From Macrostomum lignano (Eukaryota), in NCBI GenBank assembly GCA_002269645.1, contig NIVC01002145.1, positions 62,001 through 126,000 on the forward strand: DNA of 64,000 nucleotides. The letters run 5' to 3'. Shown in pieces: positions 7,347 to 46,930 of this stretch. Numbering within the stretch: position 1 is the stretch's first letter; the number at the start of each line of letters is the position of its first letter. The notes beneath the pieces were generated by a model. The model had not been told where the DNA came from. It saw only the letters and a program-made list of their open reading frames with translations, and did no database searches. Both the position numbers and the translations under genes were made by a program.

Positions 7347-7539
7347 TCAGAGAGTCACGTGACAGCCGAACAGCTGCAGCAGCTGCCGGTGCACGCGGAC
7401 CGCCAGGCCGGCCTGCCGCAGCACTTCCCCGTCGCAGTTCCACACGGACCCGGCCGGATTGTCCAGAACGCGCACGGAAAACTGGCGCACTCGGTGGACC
7501 TGCGTGCGGGGTGGAAGCCCGTTGGTGGGTGCTGGGGTC

Positions 7540-7604
<65 letters not shown>

Positions 7605-21985: not shown

Positions 21986-22972
21986 AGTTTTTTTATGCAC
22001 TCGAACGTTGATTATTTTACATTGTTTAAACTCAATTAAACTAAAGGTTTTCCGTAAAACAGCATGACAACAATACTAAGGAAATTGACGCTCAGTTAAG
22101 TCTTTTACACAATGCTACTCGTAAAATACATAATTAGCACGCTTCGACTATACTGAAACTCTTCTCTACAAAATCTGTTTCTGGTTGTTAATTTTTAACT
22201 TTCTGGCAACTTGACAACGGGCCAAAGATATATTATTCAACAAGAGCATCAATTGTGGCACACACTTGCTAAGAGTGTGTTGTAGATAGGCTTTGTTCAG
22301 GAACAGCTTTCGGATCTCTGCTTCTCTCAGTTCTCCCTTGCTAAGCGAATAGAACGAGAATTGTAGCGAACATTGCAGCAGCAGCAGCGGCAGCATCGGT
22401 GCCTGCCGTCTTCAACTGCATGGAGCCAAGGTGACCCAGACGCCAGGACTTGGAGTTGCCAACTCTTGCCCAAGCCAAATCCACTCTTAACAATCCAGAC
22501 TCCTGGCTCTGGGTCTCCTTGATCGGAGCCCACGCGCAACTGTAGCGAAACACAGCCACCCCCAACCCTCCCCTTCCATGGAGCCATTGCATTCGGGATT
22601 CGAAAATTAGTATTTTGAACAAGAGAAAATATTCAATGAAAAAAGGACTGATTCGGAAGCTGGAAAATGGGAAAGCAGTTTCGGAGCCTCATTGCTGGAC
22701 ATTTGAGATGCAGGGATGCTGCGCCTTCCTCATCAGAGCGTTGGAGCATCGGGTTTCTAAGAAATTGATACAAGTGCCGCGGCTCTCCTCTGATCTGTCA
22801 CTGGCTGTCATTGTGCAGCTCGTCCGCCCACCTGCCAGCTCCTCACCCGCTCCCCTCTCCTCCTCCGCGGCCGACTCTCCGGCCAGAGCCCTTGGGTTCG
22901 ATTCCCTGCGCGGGTCACGCTAATTAACGGGAGGGCTGAATAAGCGCTACGTTCTAAATATTAACTAACTAG

Positions 22973-23298
<326 letters not shown>

Positions 23299-25310: not shown

Positions 25311-26134
25311 CAGCCAATCTTATAATCAAATAAGCACCCAGCTGGCCCCGCATGGGATTCTGGAGGCCAGTAATTACAGGCCGGACACAGTGTTATGCTG
25401 TTAGATAAGTTACAAAAGAAAATTTCGTGGGAAAGTCATCAAGCCTGAGCTAAAACATGAAGGATGCATAGCACCAATGTGATAGGCTCTGAAGCAAGCG
25501 CAAATAGAAGACCAAGTATAACAAAGCAAAGGATTAGAGCTAGACAGAGACAGAGAAAGGAGAAACAAACGCACATAGGATAGAGAGAGGCCTGCAGTTG
25601 CAGGTTCACCAATTGTATCAAAAACATCGCTTGCGTTCGGAGGAAGAATCGGGGGGGGGGGCGCGGCGGGTGCGGGGGCCTGCGCGAGAGCGGGCGGCAA
25701 TGGCGCGGCCTGGGTTACAGCTATAGCCGAGTCCTCCTTCTCTTCTTCCTAATATTCGAATATTCGGAAATTTTCGCTACATTCTTCACCGCGCCAGCTA
25801 TGAAGAACTGTGCACCCGGGAGCTAAGCGAGAGTGAGGGGGAGACGAGAGGAGAGAAAAAAACAGGATCGAGGTTGCCAACCCCCCCGCTAGCTATGCGA
25901 GCTGCTCCACCTTCTCATTCTTGGCCGGGGCCCGATTGTAGCAAAACTTGAAAGCCATGCAGGCAGCTTGAGAAAGGGGCAGAGGGCTCCGGCTTTGGGG
26001 GGCCGAGCAAACGCAACCTCTCAGTCCCCAGCTTTCGGACTGGCTTGCTGCTGATTCCATGGCTATCTGTGTGTCCTTAGCGGGAGTCCTCAGTTCCGAT
26101 AGACACTGAGACACTTTTTATCAATAGTTTTGAA

Positions 26135-26151
26135 GACAGACAGACAGACAC

Positions 26152-26242
<91 letters not shown>

Positions 26243-26358
26243 CACAGACACACAGACAGACAGACAGACACACAGACAGACAGACAGACAGACAGACACA
26301 TAGACAGACAGACAGACAGACAGACAGGCAGGCAGACAGACAGACAGACAGGCAGACA
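26135..26358. repeat. (GACA)n microsatellite with GGCA/CACA variants
   Basis: Direct observation. Confidence 0.95.
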
Positions 26359-27085
26359 CTCTTACGACTGTCTGTGTGTTTAGCGGGACCTGAGTTATGT
26401 TAATGCGTTACGTGGACCACGCAATTCCGGTTAAAAAATAGAGTCTGTTTTGACAACGCGAAAGGCTAGCTAGGGTTATCTTTTTGTTAACTTGACGGAA
26501 TAGCCAGTTCGTGGAAACTGTGGTGGTTCACTAACTACGTTTTGGGGACCGGGTTAGGTGGACCGCAAAAAAACAGTTGGTTTAGTTAGACCTCTTTCGT
26601 TGTAGAAAATTTATTGCTTTAAACTGTTCTTTTGAACTAATTAAAACAGAAATTCTCAAAAAGAACAGATAAAAGGGTTACGACGTCATTTAATGAAAAT
26701 ATCCCAAGTTCAAACCAATTTATATAGCATTATTAATCGGGTTAATCGGGTTAAACAAATGTACGATCGCATTAGTTAGTTGCGTCGCGTGAATACAAGA
26801 AGGTGAATGAAAATAAAGCATTTTAAAAATAAATACCGAATCATATCAAATACTAACTGTAAACTCATTAAAACTAATTTAGGTCAAAATGTATGCTTCA
26901 AATACATGTTAACAAACGTAAGATTCCATTAGTTAATAAAGGTCATCGAGTACGAGCCTACAAGAAGTTGAAGGGCATTTTTAATAACGACAAAAGTTAC
27001 TAAAACTGAAATTAAATTTATTTGACTACATCAGTCCTATTATACTGAATGAGTTGGTGAGCAATCATATGCTAAGCCAATCATT

Positions 27086-27401
27086 TTACCGACTTTCATC
27101 TTTTCGTTCACGCAGATGATGGCTTAATCTTCTTATTTTTTCTACGAAATATTCTCCTGGACCTTCCCTGCCTCCGTGGTCCGGGACCGCTTCTGTTATT
27201 GATCTGTCATTGCCTCTCTCACGAAGTTCAGCTTACTCAGCCATCGAATCCGCTTTCGTCAGCTCAGCTCTATGATGAACCTTTCTATATTTCTCGTCAA
27301 TTAGTAGTTTGAATCTTCTTTTAAAGTTCGTTTTAACCTTCATCTCGGTGAAACGCAGTCAGTCTCGTCGAGATCAGGCGAACAAAATCAACCACAGGCT
27401 C
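27086..27401 (-). pseudogene. Decayed BESS-motif-like exon (MADF-BESS / Harbinger-ORF1-like)
   Basis: Acceptor TTTTCTACCTTTGTAG| at 27402, then EPVVDFVRLISTRLTAFHRDE-(+1 frameshift)-VKTNFKRRFKLLIDEKYRKV..DSMAE*. Resemblance to BESS is by eye only. Confidence 0.3.
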
Positions 27402-30353
27402 CTACAAAGGTAGAAAATAAAATTAACTGACAATCAAACAGACACAGAAATCTGTTCCAGTTGTGTCTGTAGGTTATGTGGACCACCTGAGAGCCAGAGC
27501 CTCAAACAGACAGAGAAATCTGTTCGAGTTGTGTCTGTAGGTTAGATGGACCAGCTATTCTACAGCACTTCTAGGCGATAATCTGAGCCAGGAATCTCCA
27601 AGAGCCTCTCGTTACACATCCAGATGTTCTGCCTTGATGCTGGACTAGCTCACTTTCTAGGAATCTGTTCTGATTGCATTCTAACAAACTGAAGCATTCT
27701 CGGCACTAAACTTTCTCGGCGGCTCTGAGAGCCAGAGCCTCAAACAGACAGAGAAATCTGTTCGAGTTGTGTCTGTAGGTTAGGTGGACCAGCTATTCTA
27801 CAGCACTTCTAGGCGATAATCTGAGCCAGGAATCTCCGAGAGCCTTTCGTTACACATCCAGATGTTCTGCCTTGATGCTGGACTAGCTCACTTTCTAGGA
27901 ATCTGTTCTGATTACATTCTAACAAACTGAAGCATTCTCGGCACTAAACTTTCTCAGCGGCTCTGAGATCCAGAGCCTCAAACAGACAGAAATCTGTTCG
28001 AGTTGTGTCTGTAGGTTAGGTGGACCAGCTACTCCACAGCACTTCTAGGCGATAATCTGAGCCAGGAGTCTTCGAGAGACTTTCGTTACACATCCAGATG
28101 TTCTGCCTTGATGCTGGACTAGCTCACTTTCTAGGAATCTGTTCTGATTGCATTCTAACAAACTGAAGCATTTTCTGCACTAAACTTTCTCGGCGGCTCT
28201 AAGAGCCAGAGCCTAAACAGACAGAGAAATCTGCTCGAGTTGTGTCTGTAGGTTAGGTGGACCACCTTCTGAGAAACAAAGCCTCAAACAGACTGAGAGA
28301 GCTGCTTCAGTTCTGTCTGTAGGTTATGTGGACCATTTAAGAGCCAGAGCCTCAAACAGACAGAGAAATCTGTTCGAGTTGTGTCTGTAGGTTAGGTGGA
28401 CCAGCTATTCTACAGCACTTCTAGACGATAATCCGAGCCAGGAATCTCCGAGAGCCTCTCGTTACACATCCAGATGTTCTGCCTTGATGCTGGACTAGCT
28501 CACTTTCTAGGAATCTGTTCTGATTGCATTCTAACAAACTGAAGCATTTTCTGCACTAAACTTTCTCGGTGGCTCTAAGAGCCAGAGCCTAAACAGACAG
28601 AGAAATCTGCTTGAGGAGTTGTGTCTGTAGGTTAGGTGGACCACCTTCTGAGAGACAAAGCCTCAAACAGACTGAGAGAGCTGCTTCAGTTCTGTTTGTA
28701 GGTTATGTGGACCATTTAAGAGCCAGAGCCTCAAACAGACAGAGAAATCTGTTCGAGTTGTGTCTGTATGTTAGGTGGACCAGCTATTCTACAGCACTTC
28801 TAGGCGATAATCTGAGCCAGGAATCTCCGAGAGCCTCTCGTTACACATCCAGATGTTCTGCCTTGATGCTGGACTAGCTCACTTTCTAGGAATCTGTTCT
28901 GATTGCATTCTAACAAACTGAAGCATTCTCGGCACTAAACTTTCTCAGCGGCTCTGAGAGCCAGAGCCTCAAACAGACAGAGAAATCTGTTCGAGTTGTG
29001 TCTGTAGGTTAGGTGGACCAGCTACTCCACAGCACTTCTAGGCGATAATCTGAGCCAGGAATCTCCGAGAGCCTCTCGTTACACATCCAGATGTTCTGCC
29101 TTGATGCTGGACTAGCTCACTTTCTAGGAATCTGTTCTGATTGCATTCTAACAAACTGAAGCATTCTCGGCACTAAACTTTCTCGGCGGCTCTGAGAGAC
29201 AGAGCCTCAAACAGACAGAGAAATCTGTTCGAGTTGTGTCTGTAGGTTAGGTGGACCAGCTATTCTACAGCACTTCTAGGCGATAATCTGAGCCAGGAAT
29301 CTCCGAGAGCCTTTCGTTACACATCCAGATGTTCTGCCTTGATGCTGGACTAGCTCACTTTCTAGGAATCTGTTCTGATTACATTCTAACAAACTGAAGC
29401 ATTCTCGGCACTAAACTTTCTCAGCGGCTCTGAGATCCAGAGCCTCAAACAGACAGAAATCTGTTCGAGTTGTGTCTGTAGGTTAGATGGACCAGCTACT
29501 CCACAGCACTTCTAGGCGATAATCTGAGCCAGGAGTCTTCGAGAGACTTTCGTTACACATCCAGATGTTCTGCCTTGATGCTGGACTAGCTCACTTTCTA
29601 GGAATCTGTTCTGATTGCATTCTAACAAACTGAAGCATTTTCTGCACTAAACTTTCTCGGCGGCTCTAAGAGCCAGAGCCTAAACAGACAGAGAAATCTG
29701 CTCGAGTTGTGTCTGTAGGTTAGGTGGACCACCTTCTGAGAGACAAAGCCTCAAACAGACTGAGAGAGCTGCTTCAGTTCTGTCTGTAGGTTATGTGGAC
29801 CATTTAAGAGCCAGAGCCTCAAACAGACAGAGAAATCTGTTCGAGTTGTGTCTTTAGGTTAGGTGGACCAGCTATTCTACAGCACTTCTAGGCGATAATC
29901 CGAGCCAGGAATCTCCGAGAGCCTCTCGTTACACATCCAGATGTTCTGCCTTGATGCTGGACTAGCTCACTTTCTAGGAATCTGTTCTGATTGCATTCTA
30001 ACAAACTGAAGCATTTTCTGCACTAAACTTTCTCGGTGGCTCTAAGAGCCAGAGCCTAAACAGACAGAGAAATCTGCTCGAGTTGTGTCTGTAGGTTAGG
30101 TGGACCACCTTCTGAGAGACAAAGCCTCAAACAGACTGAGAGAGCTGCTTCAGTTCTGTTTGTAGGTTATGTGGACCATTTAAGAGCCAGAGCCTCAAAC
30201 AGACAGAGAAATCTGTTCGAGTTGTGTCTGTATGTTAGGTGGACCAGCTATTCTACAGCACTTCTAGGCGATAATCTGAGCCAGGAATCTCCGAGAGCCT
30301 CTCGTTACACATCCAGATGTTCTGCCTTGATGCTGGACTAGCTCACTTTCTAG

Positions 30354-30650
30354 CATACATGCGCAACAGTCGGCCGAGTCGGCCGATCCGGCCGACCGAT
30401 TTGGCGGCCAACCAAGGTAAGTCGCAAAAATGCCCACCCGAAAGAATCATACGTAGTACTAATTAGATGACGAGGCATTTAGCCCTTATAAGACAGTTAT
30501 AGTTACTTCTGCCGTTTACCCAAAATTGCGTTAATTTTGCTTAAGGGTTTCTTTTACAGGTAAGTCGCATTTTTGGCCAAAAACTACGTCGCATTTTTTG
30601 TTAAAACTAAGTCGCACGGCCGACCGAATTTTGGAGGTTGCGCATGTATG
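30354..30650. mobile_element. 297-bp MITE (8-bp TSD; hAT- or P-superfamily-like) inserted in the satellite
   Basis: Perfect 14-bp TIRs CATACATGCGCAAC / GTTGCGCATGTATG. TSD CTTTCTAG at 30346-30353 and 30651-30658. The interrupted monomer resumes exactly. Confidence 0.93.
30459..30521 (-). other. Diverged LSU (28S) rRNA fragment, helix 69-71 region, inside the MITE
   Basis: Minus strand GGGTAAACGGCAGAAGTAACTATAACTGTCTTATAAGGGCTAAATGCCTCGTCATCTAATTAG versus remembered eukaryotic consensus GGGTAAACGGCGGGAGTAACTATGACTCTCTTAAGGTAGCCAAATGCCTCGTCATCTAATTAG: 53/63 ungapped by hand. Confidence 0.85.
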
Positions 30651-33600
30651 CTTTCTAGGAATCTGTTCTGATTGCATTCTAACAAACTGAAGCATTCTCG
30701 GCACTAAACTTTCTCAGCGGCTCTGAGAGCCAGAGCCTTAAACAGACAGAAATCTGTTCGAGTTGTGTCTGTAGGTTAGATGGACCAGCTATTCTACAGC
30801 ACTTCTAGGCGATAATCTGAGCCAGGAATCTCCAAGAGCCTCTCGTTACACATCCAGATGTTCTGCCTTGATGCTGGACTAGCTCACTTTCTAGGAATCT
30901 GTTCTGATTGCATTCTAACAAACTGAAGCATTCTCGGCACTAAACTTTCTCAGCGGCTCTGGGAGCCAGAGCCTCAAACAGACAGAGAAATCTGTTCGAG
31001 TTGTGTCTGTAGGTTAGGTGGACCAGCTATTCTACAGCACTTCTAGGCGATAATCTGAGCCAGGAATCTCCGAGAGCCTCTCGTTACACATCCAGATGTT
31101 CTGCCTTGATGCTGGACTAGCTCACTTTCTAGGAATCTGTTCTGATTGCATTCTAACAAACTGAAGCATTCTCGGCACTAAACTTTCTCGGCGGCTCTGA
31201 GAGCCAGAGCCTTAAACAGACAGAAATCTGTTCGAGTTGTGTCTGTAGGTTAGGTGGACCAGCTACTCCACAGCACTTCTAGGCGATAATCTGAGCCAGG
31301 AGTCTTCGAGAGACTTTCGTTACACATCCAGATGTTCTGCCTTGATGCTGGACTAGCTCACGTTCTAGGAATCTGTTCTGATTGCATTGTAACAAACTGA
31401 AGCATTTTCTGCACTAAACTTTCTCGGCGGCTCTAAGAGCCAGAGCCTAAACAGACAGAGAAATCTGCTCGAGTTGTGTCTGTAGGTTAGGTGGACCACC
31501 TTCTGAGAGACAAAGCCTCAAACAGACTGAGAGAGCTGCTTCAGTTCTGTCTGTAGGTTATGTGGACCATTTAAGAGCCAGAGCCTCAAACAGACAGAAA
31601 TCTGTTCGAGTTGTGTCTGTAGGTTAGGTGGACCAGCTACTCCACAGCACTTCTAGGCGATAATCCGAGCCAGGAATCTCCGAGAGCCTCTCGTTACACA
31701 TCCAGATGTTCTGCCTTGATGCTGGACTAGCTCACTTTCTAGGAATCTGTTCTGATTGCATTCTAACAAACTGAAGCATTTTCTGCACTAAACTTTCTCG
31801 GTGGCTCTAAGAGCCAGAGCCTAAACAGACAGAGAAATCTGCTCGAGTTGTGTCTGTAGGTTAGGTGGACCACCTTCTGAGAGACAAAGCCTCAAACAGA
31901 CTGAGAGAGCTGCTTCAGTTCTGTCTGTAGGTTATGTGGACCATTTAAGAGCCAGAGCCTCAAACAGACAGAGAAATCTGTTCGAGTTGTGTCTGTAGGT
32001 TAGATGGACCAGCTATTCTACAGCACTTCTAGGCGATAATCTGAGCCAGGAATCTCCAAGAGCCTCTCGTTACACATCCAGATGTTCTGCCTTGATGCTG
32101 GACTAGCTCACTTTCTAGGAATCTGTTCTGATTGCATTCTAACAAACTGAAGCATTCTCGGCACTAAACTTTCTCGGCGGCTCTGAGAGCCAGAGCCTCA
32201 AACAGACAGAGAAATCTGTTCGAGTTGTGTCTGTAGGTTAGGTGGACCAGCTATTCTACAGCACTTCTAGGCGATAATCTGAGCCAGGAATCTCGAGAGC
32301 CTCTCGTTACACATCCAGATGTTCTGCCTTGATGCTGGACTAGCTCACATTCTAGGAATCTGTTCTGATTACATTCTAACAAACTGAAGCATTCTCGGCA
32401 CTAAACTTTCTCAGCGGCTCTGAGATCCAGAGCCTCAAACAGACAGAGAAATCTGTTCGAGTTGTGTCTGTAGGTTAGGTGGACCAGCTACTCCACAGCA
32501 CTTCTAGGCGATAATCTGAGCCAGGAGTCTTCGAGAGACTTTCGTTACACATCCAGATGTTCTGCCTTGATGCTGGACTAGCTCACGTTCTAGGAATCTG
32601 TTCTGATTGCATTGTAACAAACTGAAGCATTTTCTGCACTAAACTTTCTCGGCGGCTCTAAGAGCCAGAGCCTAAACAGACAGAGAAATCTGCTCGAGTT
32701 GTGTCTGTAGGTTAGGTGGACCACCTTCTGAGAGACAAAGCCTCAAACAGACTGAGAGAGCTGCTTCAGTTCTGTCTGTAGGTTATGTGGACCATTTAAG
32801 AGCCAGAGCCTCAAACAGACAGAGAAATCTGTTCGAGTTGTGTCTGTAGGTTAGGTGGACCAGCTATTCTACAGCACTTCTAGGCGATAATCCGAGCCAG
32901 GAATCTCCGAGAGCCTCTCGTTACACATCCAGATGTTCTGCCTTGATGCTGGACTAGCTCACTTTCTAGGAATCTGTTCTGATTGCATTCTAACAAACTG
33001 AAGCATTTTCTGCACTAAACTTTCTCGGTGGCTCTAAGAGCCAGAGCCTAAACAGACAGAGAAATCTGCTCGAGTTGTGTCTGTAGGTTAGGTGGACCAC
33101 CTTCTGAGAGACAAAGCCTCAAACAGACTGAGAGAGCTGCTTCAGTTCTGTCTGTAGGTTATGTGGACCATTTAAGAGCCAGAGCCTCAAACAGACAGAG
33201 AAATCTGTTCGAGTTGTGTCTTTAGGTTAGGTGGACCAGCTATTCTACAGCACTTCTAGGCGATAATCTGAGCCAGGAATCTCCAAGAGCCTCTCGTTAC
33301 ACATCCAGATGTTCTGCCTTGATGCTGGACTAGCTCACTTTCTAGGAATCTGTTCTGATTGCATTCTAACAAACTGAAGCATTCTCGGCACTAAATTTTC
33401 TCGGCGGCTCTGAGAGCCAGAGCCTCAAACAGACAGAGAAATCTGTTCGAGTTGTGTCTGTAGGTTAGGTGGACCAGCTATTCTACAGCACTTCTAGGCG
33501 ATAATCTGAGCCAGGAATCTCCGAGAGCCTCTCGTTACACATCCAGATGTTCTGCCTTGATGCTGGACTAGCTTACTTTCTAGGAATCTGTTCTGATTAC

Positions 33601-36600
33601 ATTCTAACAAACTGAAGCATTCTCGGCACTAAACTTTCTCGGCGGCTCTGAGAGCCAGAGCCTCAAACAGACAGAAATCTGTTCGAGTTGTGTCTGTAGG
33701 TTAGGTGGACCAGCTACTCCACAGCACTTCTAGGCGATAATCTGAGCCAGGAGTCTTCGAGAGACTTTCGTTACACATCCAGATGTTCTGCCTTGATGCT
33801 GGACTAGCTCACTTTCTAGGAATCTGTTCTGATTGCATTCTAACAAACTGAAGCATTTTCTGCACTAAACTTTCTCGGCGGCTCTAAGAGCCAGAGCCTA
33901 AACAGACAGAGAAATCTGCTCGAGTTGTGTCTGTAGGTTAGGTGGACCACCTTCTGAGAGACAAAGCCTCAAACAGACTGAGAGAGCTGCTTCAGTTCTG
34001 TCTGTAGGTTATGTGGACCATTTAAGAGCCAGAGCCTCAAACAGACAGAGAAATCTGTTCGAGTTGTGTCTGTAGGTTAGGTGGACCAGCTATTCTACAG
34101 CACTTCTAGGCGATAATCTGAGCCAGGAATCTCCGAGAGCCTCTCGTTACACATCCAGATGTTCTGCCTTGATGCTGGACTAGCTCACTTTCTAGGAATC
34201 TGTTCTGATTGCATTCTAACAAACTGAAGCATTCTCGGCACTAAACTTTCTCGGCGGCTCTGAGAGCCAGAGCCTTAAACAGACAGAAATCTGTTCGAGT
34301 TGTGTCTGTAGGTTAGATGGACCAGCTATTCTACAGCACTTCTAGGCGATAATCCGAGCCAGGAATCTCCGAGAGCCTCTCGTTACACATCCAGATGTTC
34401 TGCCTTGATGCTGGACTAGCTCACTTTCTAAGAATCTGTTCTGATTGCATTCTAACAAACTGAAGCATTTTCTGCACTAAACTTTCTCGGCGGCTCTAAG
34501 AGCCAGAGCCTAAACAGACAGAGAAATCTGCTCGAGTTGTGTCTGTAGGTTAGGTGGACCACCTTCTGAGAGACAAAGCCTCAAACAGACTGAGAGAGCT
34601 GCTTTAGTTCTGTCTGTAGGTTATGTGGACCATTTAAGAGCCAGAGCCTCAAACAGACAGAGAAATCTGTTCGAGTTGTGTCTGTAGGTTAGGTGGACAA
34701 GCTATTCTACAGCACTTCTAGGCGATAATCCGAGCCAGGAATCTCTAAGAGCCTCTCGTTACGCATCCAGATGTTCTGCCTTGATGCTGGACTAGCTCAC
34801 TTTCTAGGAATCTGTTCTGATTGCATTCTAACAAACTGAAGCATTCTCGGCACTAAACTTTCTCGGCGGCTCTAAGAGCCAGAGCCTCAAACAGACAGAG
34901 AAATCTGTTCGAGTTGTGTCTGTAAGTTAGATGGACCAGCTATTCTACAGCACTTCTAGGCGATAATCTGAGCCAGGAATCTCCGAGAGCCTCTCGTTAC
35001 ACATCCAGATGTTCTGCCTTGATGCTGGACTAGCTCACATTCTAGGAATCTGTTCTGATTGCATTCTAACAAACTGAAGCATTCTCGGCAACAAAAAATT
35101 CTCGGCGGCTCTGAGAGCCAGAGCCTCAAACAGACAGAGAAATCTGTTCGAGTTGAGTCTGTAGGTTAGGTGGACCAGCTACTCCACAGCACTTCTAGGC
35201 GATAATCTGAGCCAGGAATCTCCGAGAGCCTCTCGTTACACATCCAGATGTTCTGCCTTGATGCTGGACTAGCTCACTTTCTAGGAATCTGTTCTGATTG
35301 CATTCTAACAAACTGAAGCATTCTCGGCACTAAACTTTCTCGGCGGCTCTGAGAGCCAGAGCCTCAAACAGACAGAGAAATCTGTTCGAGTTGTGTCTGT
35401 AGGTTAGGTGGACCAGCTACTCCACAGCACTTCTAGGCGATAATCTGAGCCAGGAATCTTCAAGAGACTTTCGTTACACATCCAGATGTTCTGCCTTGAT
35501 GCTGGACTAGCTCACTTTCTAGGAATCTGTTCTGATTGCATTCTAACAAACTGAAGCATTCTCGGCACTAAATTTTCTCGGCGGTTCTGAGAGCCAGAGC
35601 TTCAAACAGACAGAGAAATCTGTTCGAGTTGTGTCTGTAGGTTAGGTGGACCAGCTATTCTACAGCACTTCTAGGCGATAATCCGAGCCAGGAATCTCCG
35701 AGAGCCTCTCGTTACACATCCAGATGTTCTGCCTTGATGCTGGACTAGCTCACTTTCTAAGAATCTGTTCTGATTGCATTCTAACAAACTGAAGCATTCT
35801 CGGCACTAAATTTTCTCGGCGGCTCTGAGAGCCAGAGCCTCAAACAGACAGAAATCTGTTCGAGTTGTGTCTGTAGGTTAGGTGGACCAGCTATTCTACA
35901 GCACTTCTAGGCGATAATCCGAGCCAGGAGTCTCCGAGAGCCTCTCGTTACACATCCAGATGTTCTGCCTTGATGCTGGACTAGCTCACTTTCTAGGAAT
36001 CTGTTCTGATTGCATTCTAACAAACTGAAGCATTTTCTGCACTAAACTTTCTCGGCGGCTCTGAGAGCCAGAGCCCTAAACAGACAGAGAAATCTGTTCG
36101 AGTTGTGTCTGTAGGTTAGGTGGACCACCTTCTGAGAGACAAAGCCTCAAACAGACTGAGAGAGCTGCTTCAGTTCTGTCTGTAGGTTATGTGGACCACC
36201 TAATAGCCAGAGCTCTAAACAGACAGAGAAATCTGTTCGAGTTGTGTCTGTAGGTTAGGTGGACCAGCTATTCTATAGCACTTCTAGGCGATAATCTGAG
36301 CCAGGAATCTCCGAGAGCCTCTCGTTACACATCCAGATGTTCTGCCTTGATGCTGGACTAGCTCACTTTCTAGGAATATGTTCTGATTGCATTCTAACAA
36401 ACTGAAGCATTCTCGGCACTAAACTTTCTCAGCGGCTCTGAGAGCCAGAGCCTCAAACAGACAGAGAAATCTGTTCGAGTTGTGTCTGTAGGTTAGGTGG
36501 ACCAGCTTCTCTACAGCAATTGAGTTGCAGGCCTTGCAGCTAGCTACTTTGAGATCATCAAACGAAACTCACTTTTCTGGACTCGGTGTCGACGGATTTG

Positions 36601-38249
36601 CGAGCAGACTGATGATTTTCACCAGGCGATGCGGCTTCTTCGATTTCGCAGTGGCTTTTTGCGACGGTGTTTTTTTAGTTTTTATTTTAGGCTTGGCGTC
36701 CTTTTTTGCGGGTCATCATATCTTGGTTGTAGATTACAGTTTTTGGCACAATAAATTTATATATGGATGAAACTTGGAGTAATGATTAACATTAGACCTA
36801 TTAAGTATAAAAAACCGTTCTAATTTATACAATTGCAATCCTTTAGAGTTGTATAGTATGGATTATAAGTACTTTCTTTTAAACTGTCTGTGTCTGGTCT
36901 CACTACGCCATGGTTTACGTGGACCACCCGCTTAGACATTATATATCCCTCTCTCCACTGTCTTACCTTCAGAACGCTTGCGGGTTTCCTATTGGCTGCG
37001 GTCGGTCCCATTGTTGGGGTGGATCTATCCTCCTAAGTGTTAACCAGCCAATTATAGAAAGGGAGGTCTGTCTGTCTGTCTGTTCCAACCCTATACTCCT
37101 GCACATGTGTTTACGTGGACCAAACAGACAGTGAGTGTTAGGCTGACTGTTAATGCGTTCTTAGTTTTACTGGGACCGCAATCAAGTCGACCTTTTGCTA
37201 GAGAGTCAGAGACCCAATCGCTAGCTAAAAGGCCCTTCTTAATTGCGTCCTCTTGATCAAATCTTTTGCATGTACATGTATGAATTGTCCTTTTCAATTA
37301 GGTAAATTGCATCTTCAACTTTGCACTTGAAAGGCTGCAGCTTAGGATCTTCTTCTTCCAACATTGGAGGAGGATAGAACAGGATATCCCATAGTGTTTA
37401 GGATAGAATTGGCAAGCACTTAATTCATGAAGTTGCTATTTTCTTCTTGTGTAATGGTAGAGCCTCAGAAATTCGCATTTACACAGTGTGGCTATCAAGG
37501 ACCACTGGGAGTTCTTGAGAAGTCATTGAAGAATACTATTTAGGCTTCACTTAAATATCTTTCTTGTCTCGGAGTCTTTATCGTTTGATCTGGTTAGCGA
37601 ATTGGATTTCTTTACGTTGGTGTCTTACTCTGTGAGTCTGTGCTCAGAGTACGATACCGAAATTGCTGGAACTGAGCTAATTAAATGGAGTTTAAAGTTT
37701 ACTGTATCAAATTCATTTCGCATACGAGGTTTCAGAATTTAACCTGCGTACCTACTTGAATGTCAAAGATGTTGAACGCATATTGTTTTAAAGCCAGTGG
37801 CGGTCATAATATGATGTTAACATAGCCATTTGTTCGTAAGGTAATGATCTGTAAAAAATTCAGTTTTGCATCGAATCTATGCTTAATAACTGCTATACAC
37901 AAACAGACACAAACAGACACAAACAGACACAAACAGACGATTTTCGAAAAATTTTCTAAAATTTTTCGGTTTACGTGGACCAGACTCGCTCAGTTTAGGT
38001 AGACCAGGCTGGAGGTCCAGCTAAACTGAAATGCAAATAACTTTGGAAAAAACCATGCTAGACATCCCAAAATTGCTTAAGCCTTTCTTGACCCGCCTGA
38101 CATTAATGTGAGATCCTCATCAACGTCTTAACCCCACCAGAGACAAAATTATTTGGTGGTCCACCTAAGTGGTCTACCTACACCGGGTGGTCCAGCTAAC
38201 GAGGCTACTAAACTTCCAAAAAGTCCACGTAAACACACAGACAGTAGAA

Positions 38250-38302
38250 CAGACAGACAGGCAGGCAGACAGACAGACAGACAGGCAGACAGACAGACAG
38301 AC
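38250..38302. repeat. (GACA/GGCA)n microsatellite just upstream of the DM1 exon acceptor
   Basis: Direct observation. Confidence 0.9.
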
Positions 38303-38329
38303 GATCAGTTCAACCCTGGCCACTCGCAG

Positions 38330-39204
38330 GCAGCAGCACAGGCTGCAGTCAGCGGCAGTGCCAGTCAGCCTGGGCCCTAGCGGAGGCTACAGCAACCGCA
38401 AGCAGTACTTCTGTCGAAAGTGCAAAGGCCACGGCATCAACATTAGCGTCAAAGGTCACAAGCGGAACTGCAAATACAGAACCTGCCCCTGCCCCAAGTG
38501 TGAACTGGTGGAGCACGGTAGGCAGATTGTGGCCAAGCAGATTAGCAATTATCGCAAGCAGCGAACTCAGGACCTACTTGCTGAGCAGGAGCAGCGGCTG
38601 AAAGGTCATCCGCCGCCGCCTCCACCGCTTCCACCCTCGGCAGCGCAGTCTCAGCTGGCGTCTCTGGCAGCAGTGGCGCAGCTTCCGGGGTTTCTGGCTC
38701 AGGCTGGCAGTTCCTCGATACCTCGGTCAGCCGAAGCGAAGCGGCTGCAAGCGACTGCCGGAGGCACGAAGGAGGGTGAGGGTGAATTCTCAGACTGTTG
38801 AACAATGAGCCTCAGAGATGCTTCTTAAGGTCAAACTAAAAAGAGAATCCTTCCCCAGGTCAACATAGAAAGGGAATCCTTTCCAAGGTCAAACTAGAAG
38901 GGGAATCCCCCCTAAGGTAAATCTCGGAGGGGAATCCTCCCAAGGTCAAAATAGGTGAATCCTCCCCAAGGTCAAGCATGCGAGACGATGCTAGAAGAGA
39001 CTAACCAAACTTCTCCACATCCCGCCGTTCAGACGAAGGCCCGCACTGTCGTCGGTGCCGCAACCACGGCATAATTCAATTGTGGCGCGGTCACAAGAAG
39101 CGCTGCCCGAAGGCGCAGTGCATCTGCGACGATTGTTCGCTAATTGCGCTGCGCAAATCCAACGACAAGTCGCTGAGGGAAGAGAACCAGCAGTCGCAGC
39201 AACG

Positions 39205-39237
<33 letters not shown>

Positions 39238-39358
39238 ACAGCAACAAATCACCACCAGATTCGATCACTTAGACTTCAAGCACGATGATCAGTTCACTTC
39301 CGCCATCGCCGGTGGCCATTTAAGCGCGTTTGGGCACCACCATCACCACCACCACCAC

Positions 39359-39389
<31 letters not shown>

Positions 39390-40592
39390 TTCAGAATCAG
39401 CAGCTGCCAAGCAGCAGTCGCCGTCCTCAGCGGCCCGTGGCGCCCGTAGCGCCGTTTCCGCATCAGCAGCATCAGCAGCTGCACCATCAACACCACCCGC
39501 CAGCGCCGACCATCGGGTCCTTGACTCTGGAGCCGATCGAAGCGGCCGCGGCGGCTGCCGCGGCTGCAGCGGCGGCTGCGGCTGCTGCAGTATCGGCGAC
39601 GTCCACCGAGGAGTCCATCAAGCCGGACCCGGCCGCATCTGCGACCGCGGCCATCGGAGACACCGTCGCGTCAATGACCCCGCCGACAGGCTTGGAGGAA
39701 AAAAGTGAGCAGCAGCTCTGAGCTGCAGCAGAAATACAGGGGGGCATCCAATCCGAGAGATGACTGCTGCTCAAGCAGATCTTGGGAAATGAAACTGCGA
39801 GTGCTCAAAAAAATCCACAAGCAATTTTTCATTCCAGCAGCTCGTCACTATCAGCCGTTTTGCTTCCCCGGCGTCGGCGTTGGCGGAGGCGGCATCGGCG
39901 GGCCGGAAGTCGACATTGGAGGCGTCGGCGCTTTCGACCTACCTAGCGGTGGCATCGGCGGCGGCGCCGGCTGCAGTGTCGGCTTTGAAGAGCAGTCGGC
40001 GTCGCTCTACCAGAAGGCGCAGTCTTGCTGGCGGCTGGCCGACCCTTACGGGTCTGGCGGCGGTGAGTACAACCGATTGAGCAGACATTTTGACATGAGA
40101 CAGCGGACACTTAGACAATAGACAGCAGACACTCTGACAATAGACAGCAGAAACCTCGACATGAGACAGCAGAAACCTCGACATGAGACAGCAGACACTT
40201 TGACAATAGACAGCAGATATTTTGACAATAGACAGCGGAAATTTTGACAATAGACAGCAGACATTTTGACAACATACAGCAGACACTTTGACAATAGACA
40301 GCAGACACTTTAGTAATATTCAGCAGACACTTTCACAATAGACAACAGACTGAATGGAGGATAAACTACTGTCAGTAGGAAAAATCGCGCAGCCAATGAG
40401 CTCAAACATTGAAACATTGACATTGACATCGCAGTGTACGGCAGCTACCAGGACCCGTACAGCAACTACTTTGCGCAACAGCAGGCCAAGCTGGAGCAGC
40501 AGTACGTGGCTGCCGGGCAGTACCTACCGACCTCCTTGGCTGGCGACATTGCTGACTCGCAGGGAGGCATGTGGCCTGGAAGCAGCATCTGA
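38330..40592 (+). CDS. DMRT (doublesex/mab-3-related) transcription factor with two DM domains; ~518 aa if exon 24470-24525 is included
   Basis: Exons 38330-38775 (DM1: FCRKCKGHG..VKGHKRNCKYRTCPCPKC), 39033-39704 (DM2: PHCRRCRNHG..WRGHKKRCPKAQCICDDC; polyQ/H/A), 39838 (or 39841)-40062, 40435-40592 (stop). All three junctions are phase 1. Confidence 0.88.
38825..38975. repeat. Degenerate ~28-bp repeat (GGGAATCC..CCAAGGTCAA), DMRT intron
   Basis: About 5 units. Confidence 0.75.
40085..40330. repeat. ~22-bp repeat (GACAATAGACAGCAGACACTTT), DMRT intron
   Basis: About 11 degenerate units. Confidence 0.85.
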
Positions 40593-43560: not shown

Positions 43561-44079
43561 AGCTAAGCACTACAAGGAAAGCATACCCGTACACTACAAA
43601 AGTACATGAACAGTTTCTGAGAACGCGGCAACACTCGAGTTAGGATAAAACTCCAAACGGCCAACCAAGCGGAGCACAGTGTATTGTAAATACGCCGTAC
43701 AGGTGTATTAGTAATATTTCACAAATGAATAAACAAAATAACACGAAATAATTTGCCATTAGCGCGGCAGTGCAGATTGCAAATCAAAATATTTTAACTG
43801 CTCTTAGGGCAGACATGCATCGAATTGTAATGAAAGCCATTGCGTTTGTTGATACGCCAAGGTTTAAGCAGGAGATCAGTTTGCGTTTCGGGTGCAAGGC
43901 ACCTGCGCCTAGCAACTACTTGTCTCTCACACCAATATTAACTATCTGATCTTCACGGGGATACCTGTAAATCTATCTGCATATTTTTATTGAAAATGTA
44001 CAGATGCTCCACACAATTACCGTTTCGTTCAATTCAAGTATTCACCAACTGTAACATCCATACCAAAAAATCTATGGAC

Positions 44080-44812
44080 AATACCCCAGCTGATCTGCAG
44101 ACAATACTCCAGCTGATCTGCAGACAATACTCCAGCTGATCTGCAGACAATATCCCAGCTGATCTGCAGACAATATCCCATCTGATCTGCAGACAATACC
44201 CCAGCTGATCTGCAGACAATACCCCAGCTGATCTGCAGACAATACCCCAGCTGATCTGCAGACAATATCCCAGCTGATCTACAGACAATATCCCAGCTGA
44301 TCTGCAGACAATACCCCAGCTGATCTGCAGACAATATCCCAGCTGATCTGCAGACAATACCCCAGCTGATCTGCAGACAATATCCCAGCTGATCTGCAGA
44401 CAATACCCCAGCTGATCTGCAGACAATATCCCAGCTGATCTGCAGACAATATCCCAGCTGATCTGCAGACAATACCCCAGCTGATCTGCAGACAATATCC
44501 CAGCTGATCTACAGACAATATCCCAGCTGATCTGCAGACAATACCCCAGCTGATCTACAGACAATACCCCAGCTGATCTGCAGACAATACTCCAGCTGAT
44601 CTGCAGACAATATCCCAGCTGATCTACAGACAATACCCCAGCTGATCTGCAGACAATATCCCATCTGATCTGCAGACAATACCACAGCTGATCTGCAGAC
44701 AATATCCCATCTGATCTGCAGACAATACCACAGCTGATCTGCAGACAATATCCCAGCTGATCTGCAGACAATATCCCAGCTGATCTACAGACAATATCCC
44801 AGCTGATCTACA
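44080..44812. repeat. 23-bp minisatellite (CAGCTGATCTGCAGACAATA(T/C)CC)
   Basis: About 31 units. Confidence 0.95.
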
Positions 44813-45354
44813 GACTATTCCCTAAAACTATTGTACTGTTAACAGGCAGTATCGCTCCAAAAAATCTCAATATTCTCAAGAATCTACACATCATATTCAT
44901 ACAACGAATTCACAATAAAAACGCTTACAGAAACAAATTAGCAAGCACATCACGGCAAGGCAAAACGCGATTTAAGCGGGCGGTCATGCAGAGAAGCTAA
45001 TAATGTATTATATAAAATATAATCTTTTAAAAAAGCCAAGAGACAGCAAAGCAATTACAGAAAAAACCGACTGTAAGAAGTCCAGCGAAAATGTTATCAT
45101 TTAGTGCGCGCATAAGAGAGAGAGAGAACAATTATGAAATATAGACAGAGATCATCTCAGCGTGAGAATATCTCAAATAGCAACAATTATAGATGAAGCT
45201 AGCATATTACTCATATAAATATTTGAAAATGGCCACGTCATAAGCAGGCGAAAGATATGATTACGAGCTATTAATATGAGCGCTGTTTACTGCTAATCTA
45301 AAATAAGGTGGCCTACGGTAGCAAATATATAATTATTTTTAAGTGGAATCACCT

Positions 45355-45760: not shown

Positions 45761-46269
45761 ACTATTAGCAGCAATTAGCAGATAAAAAATCTTCAATAGA
45801 AATTTCTCCAATAAAAGAAGGAAGCGTAAAACTACAAAACAATTTCAATTGTCAACTAAAAAAACAGAGAACGATTCCGAATCGCTACGGATTTTAGCAA
45901 TTTCTATATTATATAAATATCAGAGTTTTATAACGCGACGCAGGCAACCAATGCAGTCAGATATTCAATATATACTACTGAAATAACAGCTACTGGTAGC
46001 GATATTATGCAACTGAAAAACAGCAGTAAAAAATAAATAATAAAATAATAACTTCTCAAGTAAAGCTGTGTGTACTTTGATTTTTAAAAACAGACAATCG
46101 CCACTATGTGGAGCGCACAAAACAGTAATCATATAATCACGCATATAAACTTTTAAGGACGTCAGCTAAAAAAGCAAGTAGATGAAGAGATTAACATTTT
46201 TGGGAGACTGATAGAATGAACTGCTGTGAGTAATTTACAGCTCTAGGATTTTTACTCTAGACAGCGCTA

Positions 46270-46850
46270 ACATCCTTAATTGGGGAGATTTCTGAGCATC
46301 CTCAATTGGGGAGATTTCTGAACATCCTTAATTGGGGAGATTCCTGAACATCCTTAATTGGGGAGATTTCTGAACATCCTCAATTGGGGAGATTTCTGAG
46401 CATCCTCAATTGGGGAGATTTCTGAATATCCTCAATTGGGGAGATTTCTGAGCATCCTCAATTGGGGAGATTTCTGAATATCCTCAATTGGGGAGATTTC
46501 TGAACATCCTCAATTGGGGAGATTTCTGAATATCCTCAATTGGGGAGATTTTTGAGCATCCTCAATTGGGGAGATTTCTGAGCATCCTCAATTGGGGAGA
46601 TTTCTGAATATCCTCAATTGGGGAGATTTCTGAACATCCTCAATTGGGGAGATTTCTGAACACCCTCAATTGGGGAGATTTTTGAGCATCCTCAATTGGG
46701 GAGATTTCTGAGCATCCTCAATTGGGGAGATTTCTGAATATCCTCAATTGGGGAGATTTCTGAACATCCTCAATTGGGGAGATTTCTGAACACCCTCAAT
46801 TGGGGAGATTTTTGAGCATCCTCAATTGGGGAGATTTCTGAATATCCTCA
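46270..46850. repeat. 26-bp minisatellite (TCTGAGCATCCTCAATTGGGGAGATT)
   Basis: About 22 units. Confidence 0.95.
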
Positions 46851-46930
46851 AATGCGGGATTTCTAAGCACCTAAAATCCTGCAAAATAACAAATCCCCCA
46901 AAAACGGCATATGGGATTTTTTAGGATTTT

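What the first reader, a model, noticed from the sequence alone, without database searches (positions are those of the whole stretch)
26322..38290. Candidate microsatellite-targeting mobile element: 11.9 kb, inverted ends, ~40-bp patterned GACA direct repeats
Both flanks carry the identical variant string AGAC-AGGC-AGGC-(AGAC)4-AGGC-AGAC (26322-26357 and 38255-38290), like a long target duplication. Just inside are 23-bp inverted ends (20/23). The end motif GTTTA(C/G)GTGGACC recurs internally (~26408, 26553, 36912, 37110, 37970, inverted at ~38155-38190) and in every satellite monomer. GTCT/GACA tracts plus central tandem arrays are known for Helentron/HINE and pearl-like elements. The long patterned direct repeat and this cargo are not something I recognise.
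Basis: partly seen in the sequence, partly recalled or inferred. Interest (0 to 1): 0.8.

Follow-up and report, generated by a model that had tools for sequence, protein, structure and literature searches.

The report
Satellite-carrying inverted-end element inside GACA microsatellite
An 11.9-kb non-coding insert with inverted ends and a 9-kb internal satellite sits inside a GACA microsatellite just upstream of a doublesex/mab-3-type exon; it looks like a non-autonomous transposon with an unusually long (43-bp) flanking duplication, but no second copy could be found, so its mobility is unproven.

Summary
A 43-nt exact direct repeat (26316-26358 and 38249-38291) carries three AGGC variants found nowhere else in the window. 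It brackets 11,890 bp (26359-38248) whose ends are a 20/23 inverted repeat, extending to about 60 nt at 69%. An 11-13-nt motif, TTA(C/G)GTGGACC, occurs 4 times pointing inward in the left arm, 5 times inverted in the right arm, and about 52 times in a 9-kb satellite (27472-36503).

The interior has no ORF of note, no Pfam domain, no Rfam family and no tRNA.

The best reading is a non-autonomous inverted-end DNA element with an amplified satellite, integrated as one unit into a (GACA)n tract upstream of a DM-domain exon.

It resembles animal HINE/pearl elements. It fails their tested criteria: TT target, no duplication, and a 3'-terminal palindrome. Its placement is closest to plant microsatellite-targeted SaTar/TAFTA MULEs.

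New here: a diverged extra left-end copy (26063-26095) lies outside the repeat-bounded unit, and more end-like modules sit next to internal GTCT tracts. This suggests repeated family activity around GACA tracts.

No other copy or empty site was found in any reachable collection. The host genome is absent from them, so mobility and mechanism are inferred. Interest is moderate.

The parts
26063..26095 (+). L0: a diverged extra copy of the left-end module, outside the repeat-bounded unit and 38 bp upstream of the GACA tract
   Evidence: CTATCTGTGTGTCCTTAGCGGGAGTCCTCAGTT against 26368-26396, 27/29 matches plus two 2-nt gaps. Local score 36 against shuffles 17.7 +/- 2.2 (maximum 27). It shares the GCGGGA variant otherwise seen only in the left inverted end.
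26134..26358 (+). Left (AGAC)n microsatellite, about 56 units with scattered variants; its last 43 nt are the left direct repeat
26316..26358 (+). Left copy of the 43-nt exact direct repeat (ACAGACAGACAGGCAGGCAGACAGACAGACAGACAGGCAGACA)
26359..26424 (+). Left terminus: CTCTTACG, then the 23-nt inverted end (26367-26389), then a second motif copy (26406-26418). Together these form the left arm of a ~60-nt imperfect inverted repeat.
   Evidence: The lead-in CTCTTACG resembles the CTTTTAA that precedes internal module I1, so it is probably part of the element rather than filler.
26359..27471 (+). Left unique arm (1.1 kb, partly AT-rich) with four + oriented motif copies (26378, 26406, 26552, 26580)
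   Evidence: No ORF or Pfam domain. No other copy in the window.
27472..36503 (+). Satellite array. Units are 68, 71 and 236-240 bp, each beginning with GGTTAGGTGGACC, arranged in higher-order repeats of 1225-1467 bp.
   Evidence: Higher-order copies are 98.6-99.1% identical; the 238-bp monomers average 95.9%. Each unit junction (GTGTCTGTAGGTTAGGTGGACC) matches the inverted end at about 17/22, by my own hand alignment of sequences shown.
30354..30650 (.). Unrelated 297-bp MITE nested in the satellite: 14/14 inverted ends CATACATGCGCAAC and an 8-bp target duplication CTTTCTAG (30346-30353 and 30651-30658)
36504..38248 (+). Right arm (1.75 kb). It contains module I1 (about 36877-36932, left-end-like); (GTCT)4 at 37066-37081; module I2 (about 37095-37180, left-end-like); (ACACAAACAG)4 at 37897-37938; palindromes at 37945-37968 and 37993-38026; and an inverted motif cluster at 38158-38234.
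   Evidence: The stretch 37940-38250 folds far better than shuffles (z = -3.7).
38223..38245 (-). Right inverted end (GTCCACGTAAACACACAGACAGT), followed by AGA and then the direct repeat
38249..38291 (+). Right copy of the 43-nt exact direct repeat; the tract continues as (AGAC)3 to 38302
38304..38801 (+). Context: host exon encoding a DM (doublesex/mab-3) DNA-binding domain, starting within about 100 bp of the right repeat
   Evidence: PF00751, E = 9e-15; the frame has no ATG even in the reconstructed empty allele, so the element and microsatellite lie in an intron or 5' region.

Best explanation
A non-autonomous DNA element with inverted ends, of an undescribed family in an unsampled protostome-like animal genome.

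What the sequence shows. The unit 26359-38248 has about 60-nt imperfect inverted ends. Each end holds two copies of an 11-13-nt motif, TTA(C/G)GTGGACC, and further inward-pointing copies lie in both arms.

Inference on function. This layout is the usual one for transposase-binding sites in cut-and-paste elements such as Ac/Ds, En/Spm and P. I infer that a sequence-specific transposase supplied in trans binds this motif.

Inference on the satellite. A terminal-module-bearing segment appears to have been amplified inside the element (68/71 bp, then 238 bp, then 1.2-1.5 kb higher-order repeats). Unequal exchange is the likely process. The result is a 9-kb array of about 52 motif copies.

Inference on insertion. 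The whole unit integrated into a (GACA)n tract just upstream of a DM-domain exon. It duplicated 43 bp of uniquely patterned target. The outer halves of the ends are themselves GTCT/ACAG-like, and family modules elsewhere in the locus also sit next to GTCT/ACAG tracts. This suggests that integration is steered to GACA repeats, possibly to tracts born from older copies of the same family.

Inference on the long duplication. It would arise from widely staggered or uncoupled joining of the two ends in the repeat, followed by fill-in, rather than from a fixed-stagger cut.

Shown: the anatomy, the duplication, and the lack of coding capacity. Inferred: mobility, trans-mobilisation, motif function, and how the 43-bp duplication arose.
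For: - The exact 43-nt repeat has three private AGGC variants.
- The 20/23 inverted ends abut the repeats within 3-8 nt, and 0 of 2000 shuffles reach this match.
- The inverted similarity extends to about 60 nt with two motif copies per arm.
- The motif is enriched 66 against 1.4 expected, is confined to the unit, and is ordered by orientation.
- The interior has no ORF over 90 aa, no Pfam domain, no Rfam family and no tRNA.
- There are five end-type modules with different neighbours: L0 outside the unit, then L1, I1, I2 and R. These indicate a repeated family rather than a unique sequence.
- Modules recur next to GTCT/ACAG tracts: the (GTCT)4-I2 junction, and (ACACAAACAG)4 beside the right terminal block.
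- Removing 26359-38291 restores one continuous tract.
- There is a precedent for elements with inverted ends flanked on both sides by microsatellites and stacked through them, the SaTar/TAFTA MULEs (PMC5907723).
- A genuine cut-and-paste MITE with an 8-bp duplication sits inside the array, so such transposons have been active in this genome.
Against: - No second full copy and no empty site were found. Every external search was empty, or gave one chance hit.
- To my knowledge (recalled, not checked here) no eukaryotic cut-and-paste superfamily has a duplication longer than about 11 bp, so 43 bp is far outside that range.
- The two ends are not joined symmetrically to the repeat: 8 nt (CTCTTACG) lie between repeat and inverted end on the left, and 3 nt (AGA) on the right.
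- Only the right junction shows microhomology with the tract.
- The extra left-end copy L0 outside the unit gives an interleaved L..P..L..P layout (P = the 43-nt direct repeat). A single simple insertion does not predict this layout.
- The superfamily cannot be assigned.
Confidence: 0.5

Rival explanations
1. A resident repeat locus reshaped by repair rather than by transposition. A satellite-bearing segment, itself built from old element debris, was copied or captured into the GACA tract by replication template switching or double-strand-break repair. Alternatively, the 43-nt patterned block was copied from one flanking tract to the other by ectopic conversion. On this view the direct repeat is a repair scar, not a transposase footprint.
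For: - The 43-bp length fits repair-associated duplications better than a transposase stagger (my own knowledge, not tested here).
- The junctions are asymmetric. There is microhomology only on the right (…CAGACAGTAGA|ACAGACAG…) and an abrupt left junction.
- The interleaved L0..P..L1..P layout suggests more than one local rearrangement.
- 42% of the window is tandem repeat, so the region is recombination- and slippage-prone.
Against: - The breakpoints coincide on both sides with a significant inverted-repeat pair (0 of 2000 shuffles). Template switching does not predict this.
- The lead-in CTCTTACG resembles the lead-in of internal module I1, so it is not random filler.
- None of the 26 other arrays checked has comparable flanking direct or inverted repeats.
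Confidence: 0.2
2. A Helentron-derived non-autonomous element (HINE/DINE-1/pearl/DTC84 type), moved by rolling-circle transposition. On this view the GACA tracts are the family's own 'hitchhiking' GTCY-type microsatellite, and the repeated end modules reflect tandem or end-bypass copies.
For: The modular formula matches HINEs: short inverted repeats in both flanks, a tetranucleotide GTCY/ACAG-type microsatellite, a variable spacer, a central tandem array, and palindromes in the right arm (PMC7492417, PMC4067079 and PMC3879986).

Local features that fit:
- L0, followed by a proto-tract and then (AGAC)56, resembles a HINE left flank that ends in a microsatellite.
- The motif core GTGG-A-CCAC is palindromic, like the subterminal repeats of mite HINEs (seen directly in the sequence).
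Against: - The boundaries are not T-rich or TT. They read GACA|CTCTT and GTAGA|ACAG.
- A perfect 43-bp flanking duplication is present, whereas Helentrons make none.
- No palindrome lies within 8-35 bp of the 3' terminus. The palindromes are 220-300 bp inside and upstream of the terminal inverted end.
- The large tracts lie outside the inverted ends, not between the 5' inverted repeat and the array.
- The 38-nt spacer after L0 matches nothing in the element, which argues against a deleted tandem dimer.
Confidence: 0.12
3. An assembly artefact: a satellite-bearing contig or haplotype was spliced into the tract at a shared 43-mer.
For: - The repeat is exactly identical and microsatellite-borne, which is the kind of sequence at which graph assemblers mis-join.
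- No independent copy of the locus is available to check.
Against: - A 9-kb array with resolved higher-order structure and a nested MITE in register implies long, accurate reads.
- For a mis-join, the inserted piece would need the same 43-mer at both of its ends. That would again imply a genuine element flanked by the repeat somewhere.
- The inverted ends abutting both junctions are not explained by an artefact.
Confidence: 0.07
4. Retroposition by a microsatellite-specific non-LTR machinery (target-primed reverse transcription) of a non-coding transcript that ends in an ACAG-like tail.
For: - Long, variable target duplications and insertion into microsatellites are typical of some non-LTR lineages (stated in the abstract of PMC4640811, listed).
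- The right end merges into the ACAG tract by microhomology, while the left junction is abrupt.
Against: - Inverted ends with ordered binding-site-like motifs are not a retroposon feature.
- No poly(A), pol III promoter, tRNA, 7SL or 5S head, or ribozyme was detected.
- An 11.9-kb template is implausibly long unless the array expanded afterwards.
Confidence: 0.05

Closest known systems
SaTar / TAFTA elements (microsatellite-targeted non-autonomous MULEs of guayule, rice, sorghum, citrus and maize; PMC5907723)
   Same: - Non-coding elements defined by imperfect inverted ends of 40-250 bp.
- Flanked on both sides by the same microsatellite.
- Elements and element ends are stacked modularly through microsatellite linkers.
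- The flanks are often inconsistent with a fixed short duplication, which prompted homology- or circle-based insertion models.
   Different: - SaTars are plant MULEs with 9-10-bp duplications when outside microsatellites, and they have known autonomous partners. They are 0.4-1.7 kb and carry no satellite.
- Here the host is an animal.
- The duplication is a 43-bp exact patterned block.
- The cargo is a 9-kb satellite.
- No partner or superfamily is known.
HINE / DINE-1 / pearl / DTC84 / MINE elements (Helentron-associated, tandem-repeat-containing MITE-like elements of molluscs, insects, mites and sea urchin; PMC7492417, PMC4067079, PMC3879986)
   Same: - The module set matches: short inverted repeats in both flanks, a tetranucleotide GTCY/ACNG-type microsatellite, a central tandem array able to seed satellite DNA, and palindromes in the right arm.
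- They are non-coding.
   Different: - HINEs insert at TT in T-rich DNA without a duplication.
- Their microsatellite is internal.
- Their palindrome lies 8-35 bp from the 3' end.
- Their arrays are usually 1-6 units.
- Here the large tracts lie outside the inverted ends, a 43-bp duplication is present, the boundaries are not T-rich, and the array has over 50 units with higher-order structure.
Satellite-seeding elements with inverted ends, such as Tetris of Drosophila virilis (PMC4079207, listed)
   Same: Internal tandem repeats related to the element's terminal region are amplified into satellite-like arrays.
   Different: My recollection, not read here, is that Tetris is a foldback element whose repeats lie within long inverted arms. 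Here the array is unidirectional and central.

Membership tests
HINE / Helentron non-autonomous elements | 11-15-bp subterminal inverted repeats near both termini | tested here: met
   The 13-nt motif is inverted at 26378-26390 and 38222-34, within a 20/23 inverted repeat.
HINE / Helentron non-autonomous elements | Insertion within TT or T-rich sequence, with T runs at the element boundaries | tested here: not met
   The boundaries read …GGCAGACA|CTCTTACG… and …CAGTAGA|ACAGACAG….
HINE / Helentron non-autonomous elements | No target-site duplication | tested here: not met
   An exact 43-nt flanking duplication is present.
HINE / Helentron non-autonomous elements | A short palindrome or stem-loop downstream of the 3' subterminal repeat, 8-35 bp from the 3' terminus | tested here: not met
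   The palindromes at 37945-37968 and 37993-38026 lie 220-300 bp inside and upstream of the terminal inverted end. The last 60 bp contain none.
HINE / Helentron non-autonomous elements | An internal tetranucleotide microsatellite between the 5' flank and a central tandem array | tested here: inconclusive
   - The central array is present.
- Only small internal tracts exist: (GTCT)4 at 37066 and (ACACAAACAG)4 at 37897.
- The large tracts lie outside the inverted ends.
- If L0 (26063) were the true 5' end, the 225-bp tract would be internal.
HINE / Helentron non-autonomous elements | Termini shared with an autonomous Helentron (Rep/helicase plus endonuclease) in the same genome | not testable with these tools
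   The host genome is not in any searchable collection.
Cut-and-paste DNA transposon with inverted ends / MITE | Terminal inverted repeats | tested here: met
Cut-and-paste DNA transposon with inverted ends / MITE | A short target duplication of superfamily-specific length (2-11 bp) | tested here: not met
   No short direct repeat flanks either candidate pair of element boundaries. A 10-bp comparison fails (my own reading of the sequences), and the flanks match only as the 43-nt block (39-43 nt if the ACAG at the right end is counted as element).
Cut-and-paste DNA transposon with inverted ends / MITE | Multiple dispersed copies, or an empty site | tested here: inconclusive
   Five end-type modules occur in the window. 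There is no second full copy in the window and none in external collections.
SaTar / TAFTA-like microsatellite-targeted elements | A non-autonomous element with imperfect inverted ends, flanked on both sides by the same microsatellite | tested here: met
SaTar / TAFTA-like microsatellite-targeted elements | Modular stacking of elements linked by microsatellite domains | tested here: inconclusive
   Three arrangements are suggestive: L0-(AGAC)56-L1; (GTCT)4-I2; and (ACACAAACAG)4-right block-(ACAG)n. The modules are fragments, not intact elements.
SaTar / TAFTA-like microsatellite-targeted elements | MULE affiliation: 9-10-bp duplications outside microsatellites, and inverted-end similarity to an autonomous MULE | not testable with these tools
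   No other copies or partner are available.
Non-LTR-mobilised retroposon | A 3' simple-repeat or poly(A) tail, an internal promoter or RNA-gene head, and no inverted ends | tested here: not met
   Inverted ends are present. There is no tRNA and no Rfam family. Only the long duplication and the right-junction microhomology fit.
Ribozyme-bearing tandem repeats (retrozyme / hammerhead satellites) | A self-cleaving ribozyme motif in each monomer | tested here: not met
   There were no Rfam hits at gathering thresholds over the window. There were none at E <= 1 over 26000-28600, which includes several monomers.

The most novel reading that the evidence does not exclude
This could be an animal family of DNA elements that home to GACA/GTCT microsatellites, including tracts seeded by their own older copies. 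They would integrate by a non-canonical route that duplicates about 40 bp of target. That route could be uncoupled or widely staggered end joining, or insertion guided by homology or by a circular intermediate. Their binding-site-bearing termini would also amplify into kilobase satellites. It would be an animal counterpart of plant SaTar elements, with a new integration footprint.
Probability: 0.2. Interest if true: 0.7.

Novelty: new variant of a known kind. Interest (0 to 1): 0.4.

Why it matters
If the family is mobile and regularly produces ~40-bp duplications in GACA tracts, three things would follow.
- It would extend microsatellite-targeted transposition, so far described for plant MULEs, to animals.
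- It would give a clean footprint for studying how such targeting works. The unresolved alternatives are staggered cuts, homology or circle integration, and repair synthesis.
- It would be a well-preserved example of a transposon terminus turning into a higher-order satellite.

The locus also places 12 kb of repeat immediately upstream of the DM-domain exon of a doublesex/mab-3-type gene, a gene family often involved in sex determination. An insertion polymorphism here could have regulatory consequences.

If it is single-copy, it is simply one more complex repeat in a genome region that is 42% tandem repeat.

Tried and rejected
- **Coding capacity.** I checked all stop-to-stop segments of at least 35 aa in both unique arms, and the ORFs in the array. 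No Pfam domain passed threshold.
- **Structured RNA, ribozyme or SINE head.** Rfam at gathering thresholds over the whole window, Rfam at E <= 1 over 26000-28600, and ARAGORN all gave nothing.
- **Other copies in the window.** BLAST of both unique arms, a self-BLAST of the whole window, and an nhmmer profile of the end module found only the modules already listed plus GACA tracts.
- **Other copies outside the window.**
  - The metagenome scan with the inverted-end pattern gave one hit, L001. It lies beside an unrelated GC-rich coding sequence that looks, on my reading of its sequence alone, like a DAHP-synthase gene, so I treat it as chance.
  - The bacterial/archaeal and viral collections gave 0 hits with a satellite 20-mer and with the inverted-end pattern.
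  - The protein database gave 0 hits with the longest satellite ORF.
- **Orthologous or allelic locus through host genes.** The DM exon had no hit. The K2P channel ORF matched only scattered protostomes at 34-57% identity, so no empty-site test was possible.
- **Literature search for the motif strings.** Only unrelated primer matches turned up.
- **Tandem-dimer model** ([L-body-R-tract] x2 with the first copy deleted). The 38-nt spacer after L0 matches nothing in the element.
- **Short (e.g. 10-bp) target duplication.** The flanks do not match except as the 43-nt block.
- **'All arrays in this genome are repeat- or inverted-end-bounded inserts.'** The 26 other arrays show only chance-level flank matches, apart from two weak 10-11-nt AT-rich ones.

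Full report
**Setting.** The window is eukaryotic.
- It carries a two-pore K+ channel ORF (595-1503) and a gene with two DM (doublesex/mab-3) domains (38304-38801 and 39080-39721).
- Tandem repeats occupy 41.9% of it, in 41 arrays.
- The host is not represented in the searchable collections. The DM exon found nothing, and the channel ORF found only 34-57% identical proteins from scattered protostomes.
- So every statement about copy number or empty alleles below is limited to the 64 kb itself.

**Observation check.**
- Direct repeat. The patterned 36-mer is identical at both sites, and exact identity runs for 43 nt (26316-26358 and 38249-38291). AGGCAGGC occurs nowhere else in the window.
- Flanking tracts. 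The left tract is 225 bp and the right one about 54 bp.
- Inverted ends. 26367-26389 and 38223-38245 match at 20/23. No shuffle out of 2000 reached that in the terminal 40 nt. With gaps, the inverted similarity continues to about 60 nt (69%) and includes a second motif copy per arm.
- Motif. GTTTASGTGGACC with up to 2 mismatches gives 66 hits against 1.4 expected, and 65 of them are inside the unit. Orientation is ordered: four + copies in the left arm, about 52 + copies in the array, and five - copies in the last 230 bp.

**Interior: left arm.** It is 1.1 kb (26359-27471), non-coding and unique.

**Interior: satellite array (27472-36503).**
- It is built of 68-, 71- and 236-240-bp units, each starting with GGTTAGGTGGACC.
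- The units are arranged in higher-order repeats of 1225-1467 bp that are 98.6-99.1% identical. Monomers average 95.9%.
- Each unit junction (GTGTCTGTAGGTTAGGTGGACC) resembles the inverted end at about 17/22, by my own hand alignment. So the satellite looks like an amplified terminal module.
- Each unit also contains AAACAGACAG, a proto-GACA tract.
- A 297-bp MITE with 14/14 inverted ends and an 8-bp duplication is nested in register at 30354-30650.

**Interior: right arm (36504-38248).**
- It holds two further left-end-like modules, I1 at about 36877-36932 and I2 at about 37095-37180.
- I2 is preceded by (GTCT)4GTTC, the same junction string as at the reverse-complemented right end.
- A (ACACAAACAG)4 tract follows at 37897-37938.
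- The last ~300 bp form a strongly self-complementary block (z = -3.7), with palindromes at 37945-37968 and 37993-38026.
- No Rfam family, tRNA or Pfam domain was found anywhere in the unit.

- 26063-26095, which lies 38 bp upstream of the left tract, is a diverged copy of the first ~30 nt of the left end. It matches at 27/29 plus two 2-nt gaps, with score 36 against 17.7 +/- 2.2 in shuffles.
- It shares the GCGGGA variant otherwise private to the left inverted end.
- The locus therefore reads: L0 - spacer - (AGAC)56 including P - L1 - body - R - P - (AGAC)3 - DM exon, where P is the 43-nt direct repeat.
- The spacer matches nothing in the element, so a deleted tandem dimer is unlikely.
- The simplest reading is an older, truncated family member next to (or the source of) the tract that later received the 11.9-kb unit.
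- With I1, I2 and R, this makes five end-type modules with different neighbours. This is the only evidence available here that the sequence belongs to a repeated family.

**What it most likely is.**
- It is most likely a non-autonomous DNA element with inverted ends. Its ordered subterminal motif copies look like transposase-binding sites, and one of its terminal modules has been amplified into a satellite.
- It appears to have integrated as one unit into a GACA tract. Removing 26359-38291 restores one continuous tract.
- In that reconstructed allele the DM reading frame is open through the tract but has no ATG and meets a stop just upstream of the tract, at about 26131-26133. So the tract and the element lie in an intron or 5' region within about 100 bp of the DM-domain exon.
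- The main difficulty is the 43-bp duplication, far beyond the roughly 2-11 bp I recall (not checked here) for cut-and-paste superfamilies.
- The junctions are also asymmetric. There is microhomology on the right only, and 8 versus 3 nt lie between the repeat and the inverted end on the two sides.
- I therefore put 0.5 on the transposon reading, with the duplication attributed to widely staggered or uncoupled end joining in the repeat.
- The remaining weight is 0.2 on a repair or template-switch origin, 0.12 on a Helentron/HINE mechanism, 0.07 on misassembly and 0.05 on retroposition.

**Comparison with HINE/pearl/DTC84.**
- The published formula is: flank with inverted repeat, then microsatellite, then spacer, then central tandem repeats, then flank with inverted repeat and palindrome (PMC7492417, PMC4067079, PMC3879986). 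The locus matches this in its list of parts.
- Three defining features were tested and failed: TT or T-rich insertion, no duplication, and a palindrome 8-35 bp from the 3' end.
- It therefore should not be filed as a HINE, although a distant relationship cannot be excluded.

**Comparison with SaTar/TAFTA.**
- The closest functional analogue is the plant SaTar/TAFTA group of non-autonomous MULEs. These have imperfect inverted ends, are flanked on both sides by microsatellites, and are stacked through microsatellite linkers.
- Their flanks are often incompatible with a simple fixed duplication. Their authors proposed polymerase stuttering, or integration by homologous recombination from a circular intermediate (PMC5907723).
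- The present element differs in host kingdom, in cargo (a 9-kb higher-order satellite), and in having an exact 43-bp patterned duplication.
- Stuttering cannot produce that pattern. Circle recombination could produce it only if the circle already carried the same pattern.

**Verdict.**
- Novelty is a new variant of a known kind, namely microsatellite-associated, tandem-repeat-carrying non-autonomous elements.
- Interest is moderate (0.4). The long patterned duplication and the animal parallel to SaTar are worth a genome-wide follow-up, which is cheap once the source assembly is available. On present evidence this is one locus in a very repeat-rich region.

Noticed in passing
window 30346-30658: A 297-bp MITE (30354-30650) with perfect 14-bp inverted ends CATACATGCGCAAC and an 8-bp target duplication CTTTCTAG is inserted in register into a satellite monomer. 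The 8-bp duplication suggests a hAT- or P-like family (my recollection). It shows that the array predates this insertion.
   Followed up: partly
window 1-64000: 41.9% of the window is tandem repeat, in 41 arrays. Outside the element there are 35 arrays covering 35% of the sequence, mostly 12-50-bp units in 0.3-1.3-kb arrays between exons. None of the 26 checked has flanking direct or inverted repeats like the candidate.
   Followed up: partly
window 38304-38801 and 39080-39721: The host gene has two DM domains (the first at E = 9e-15; the second partial, 24 bits). This resembles nematode mab-3/dmd-3, by my recollection. Long poly-Q, poly-H and poly-A runs follow. The element ends within about 100 bp of the first DM-domain exon.
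   Followed up: partly
window 595-1503: A two-pore-domain K+ channel ORF (Pfam Ion_trans_2). Its best database relatives are only 34-57% identical and come from unrelated protostome phyla, so the source lineage appears unsampled.
   Followed up: partly
window 7539-7605 and 22962-23298: A perfect (CAGA)16 tract with no associated element or end module, and a near-perfect (TAAC)84 tract. So GACA tracts exist in this region without the element.
   Followed up: partly
window 44077-44822 and 46269-46864: The 80-bp flanks of these two minisatellite arrays share exact direct matches of 11 nt (CCAAAAAATCT) and 10 nt (TAGGATTTTT). This is marginally more than chance, and the matches are AT-rich.
   Followed up: no
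window 37940-38250: The right-terminal ~300 bp behave like a small self-contained inverted-repeat unit. GTTTACGTGGAC at 37969 pairs with 38223-38234. There is an internal hairpin at 37993-38026 and an AT palindrome at 37945-37968. The block is bracketed by ACAG-like tracts on both sides, so it may be a separate small family member.
   Followed up: partly
window 36990-37057: The inverted pair ATTGGCTG / CAGCCAAT encloses about 45 bp just upstream of the internal (GTCT)4 tract. The sequence is CCAAT-box-like on both strands. Its significance is unknown.
   Followed up: no
L001 54-76: The only metagenome match to the inverted-end pattern lies beside an unrelated GC-rich coding sequence that looks, on my reading of its sequence, like a DAHP-synthase gene. 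I treat it as a chance match.
   Followed up: yes
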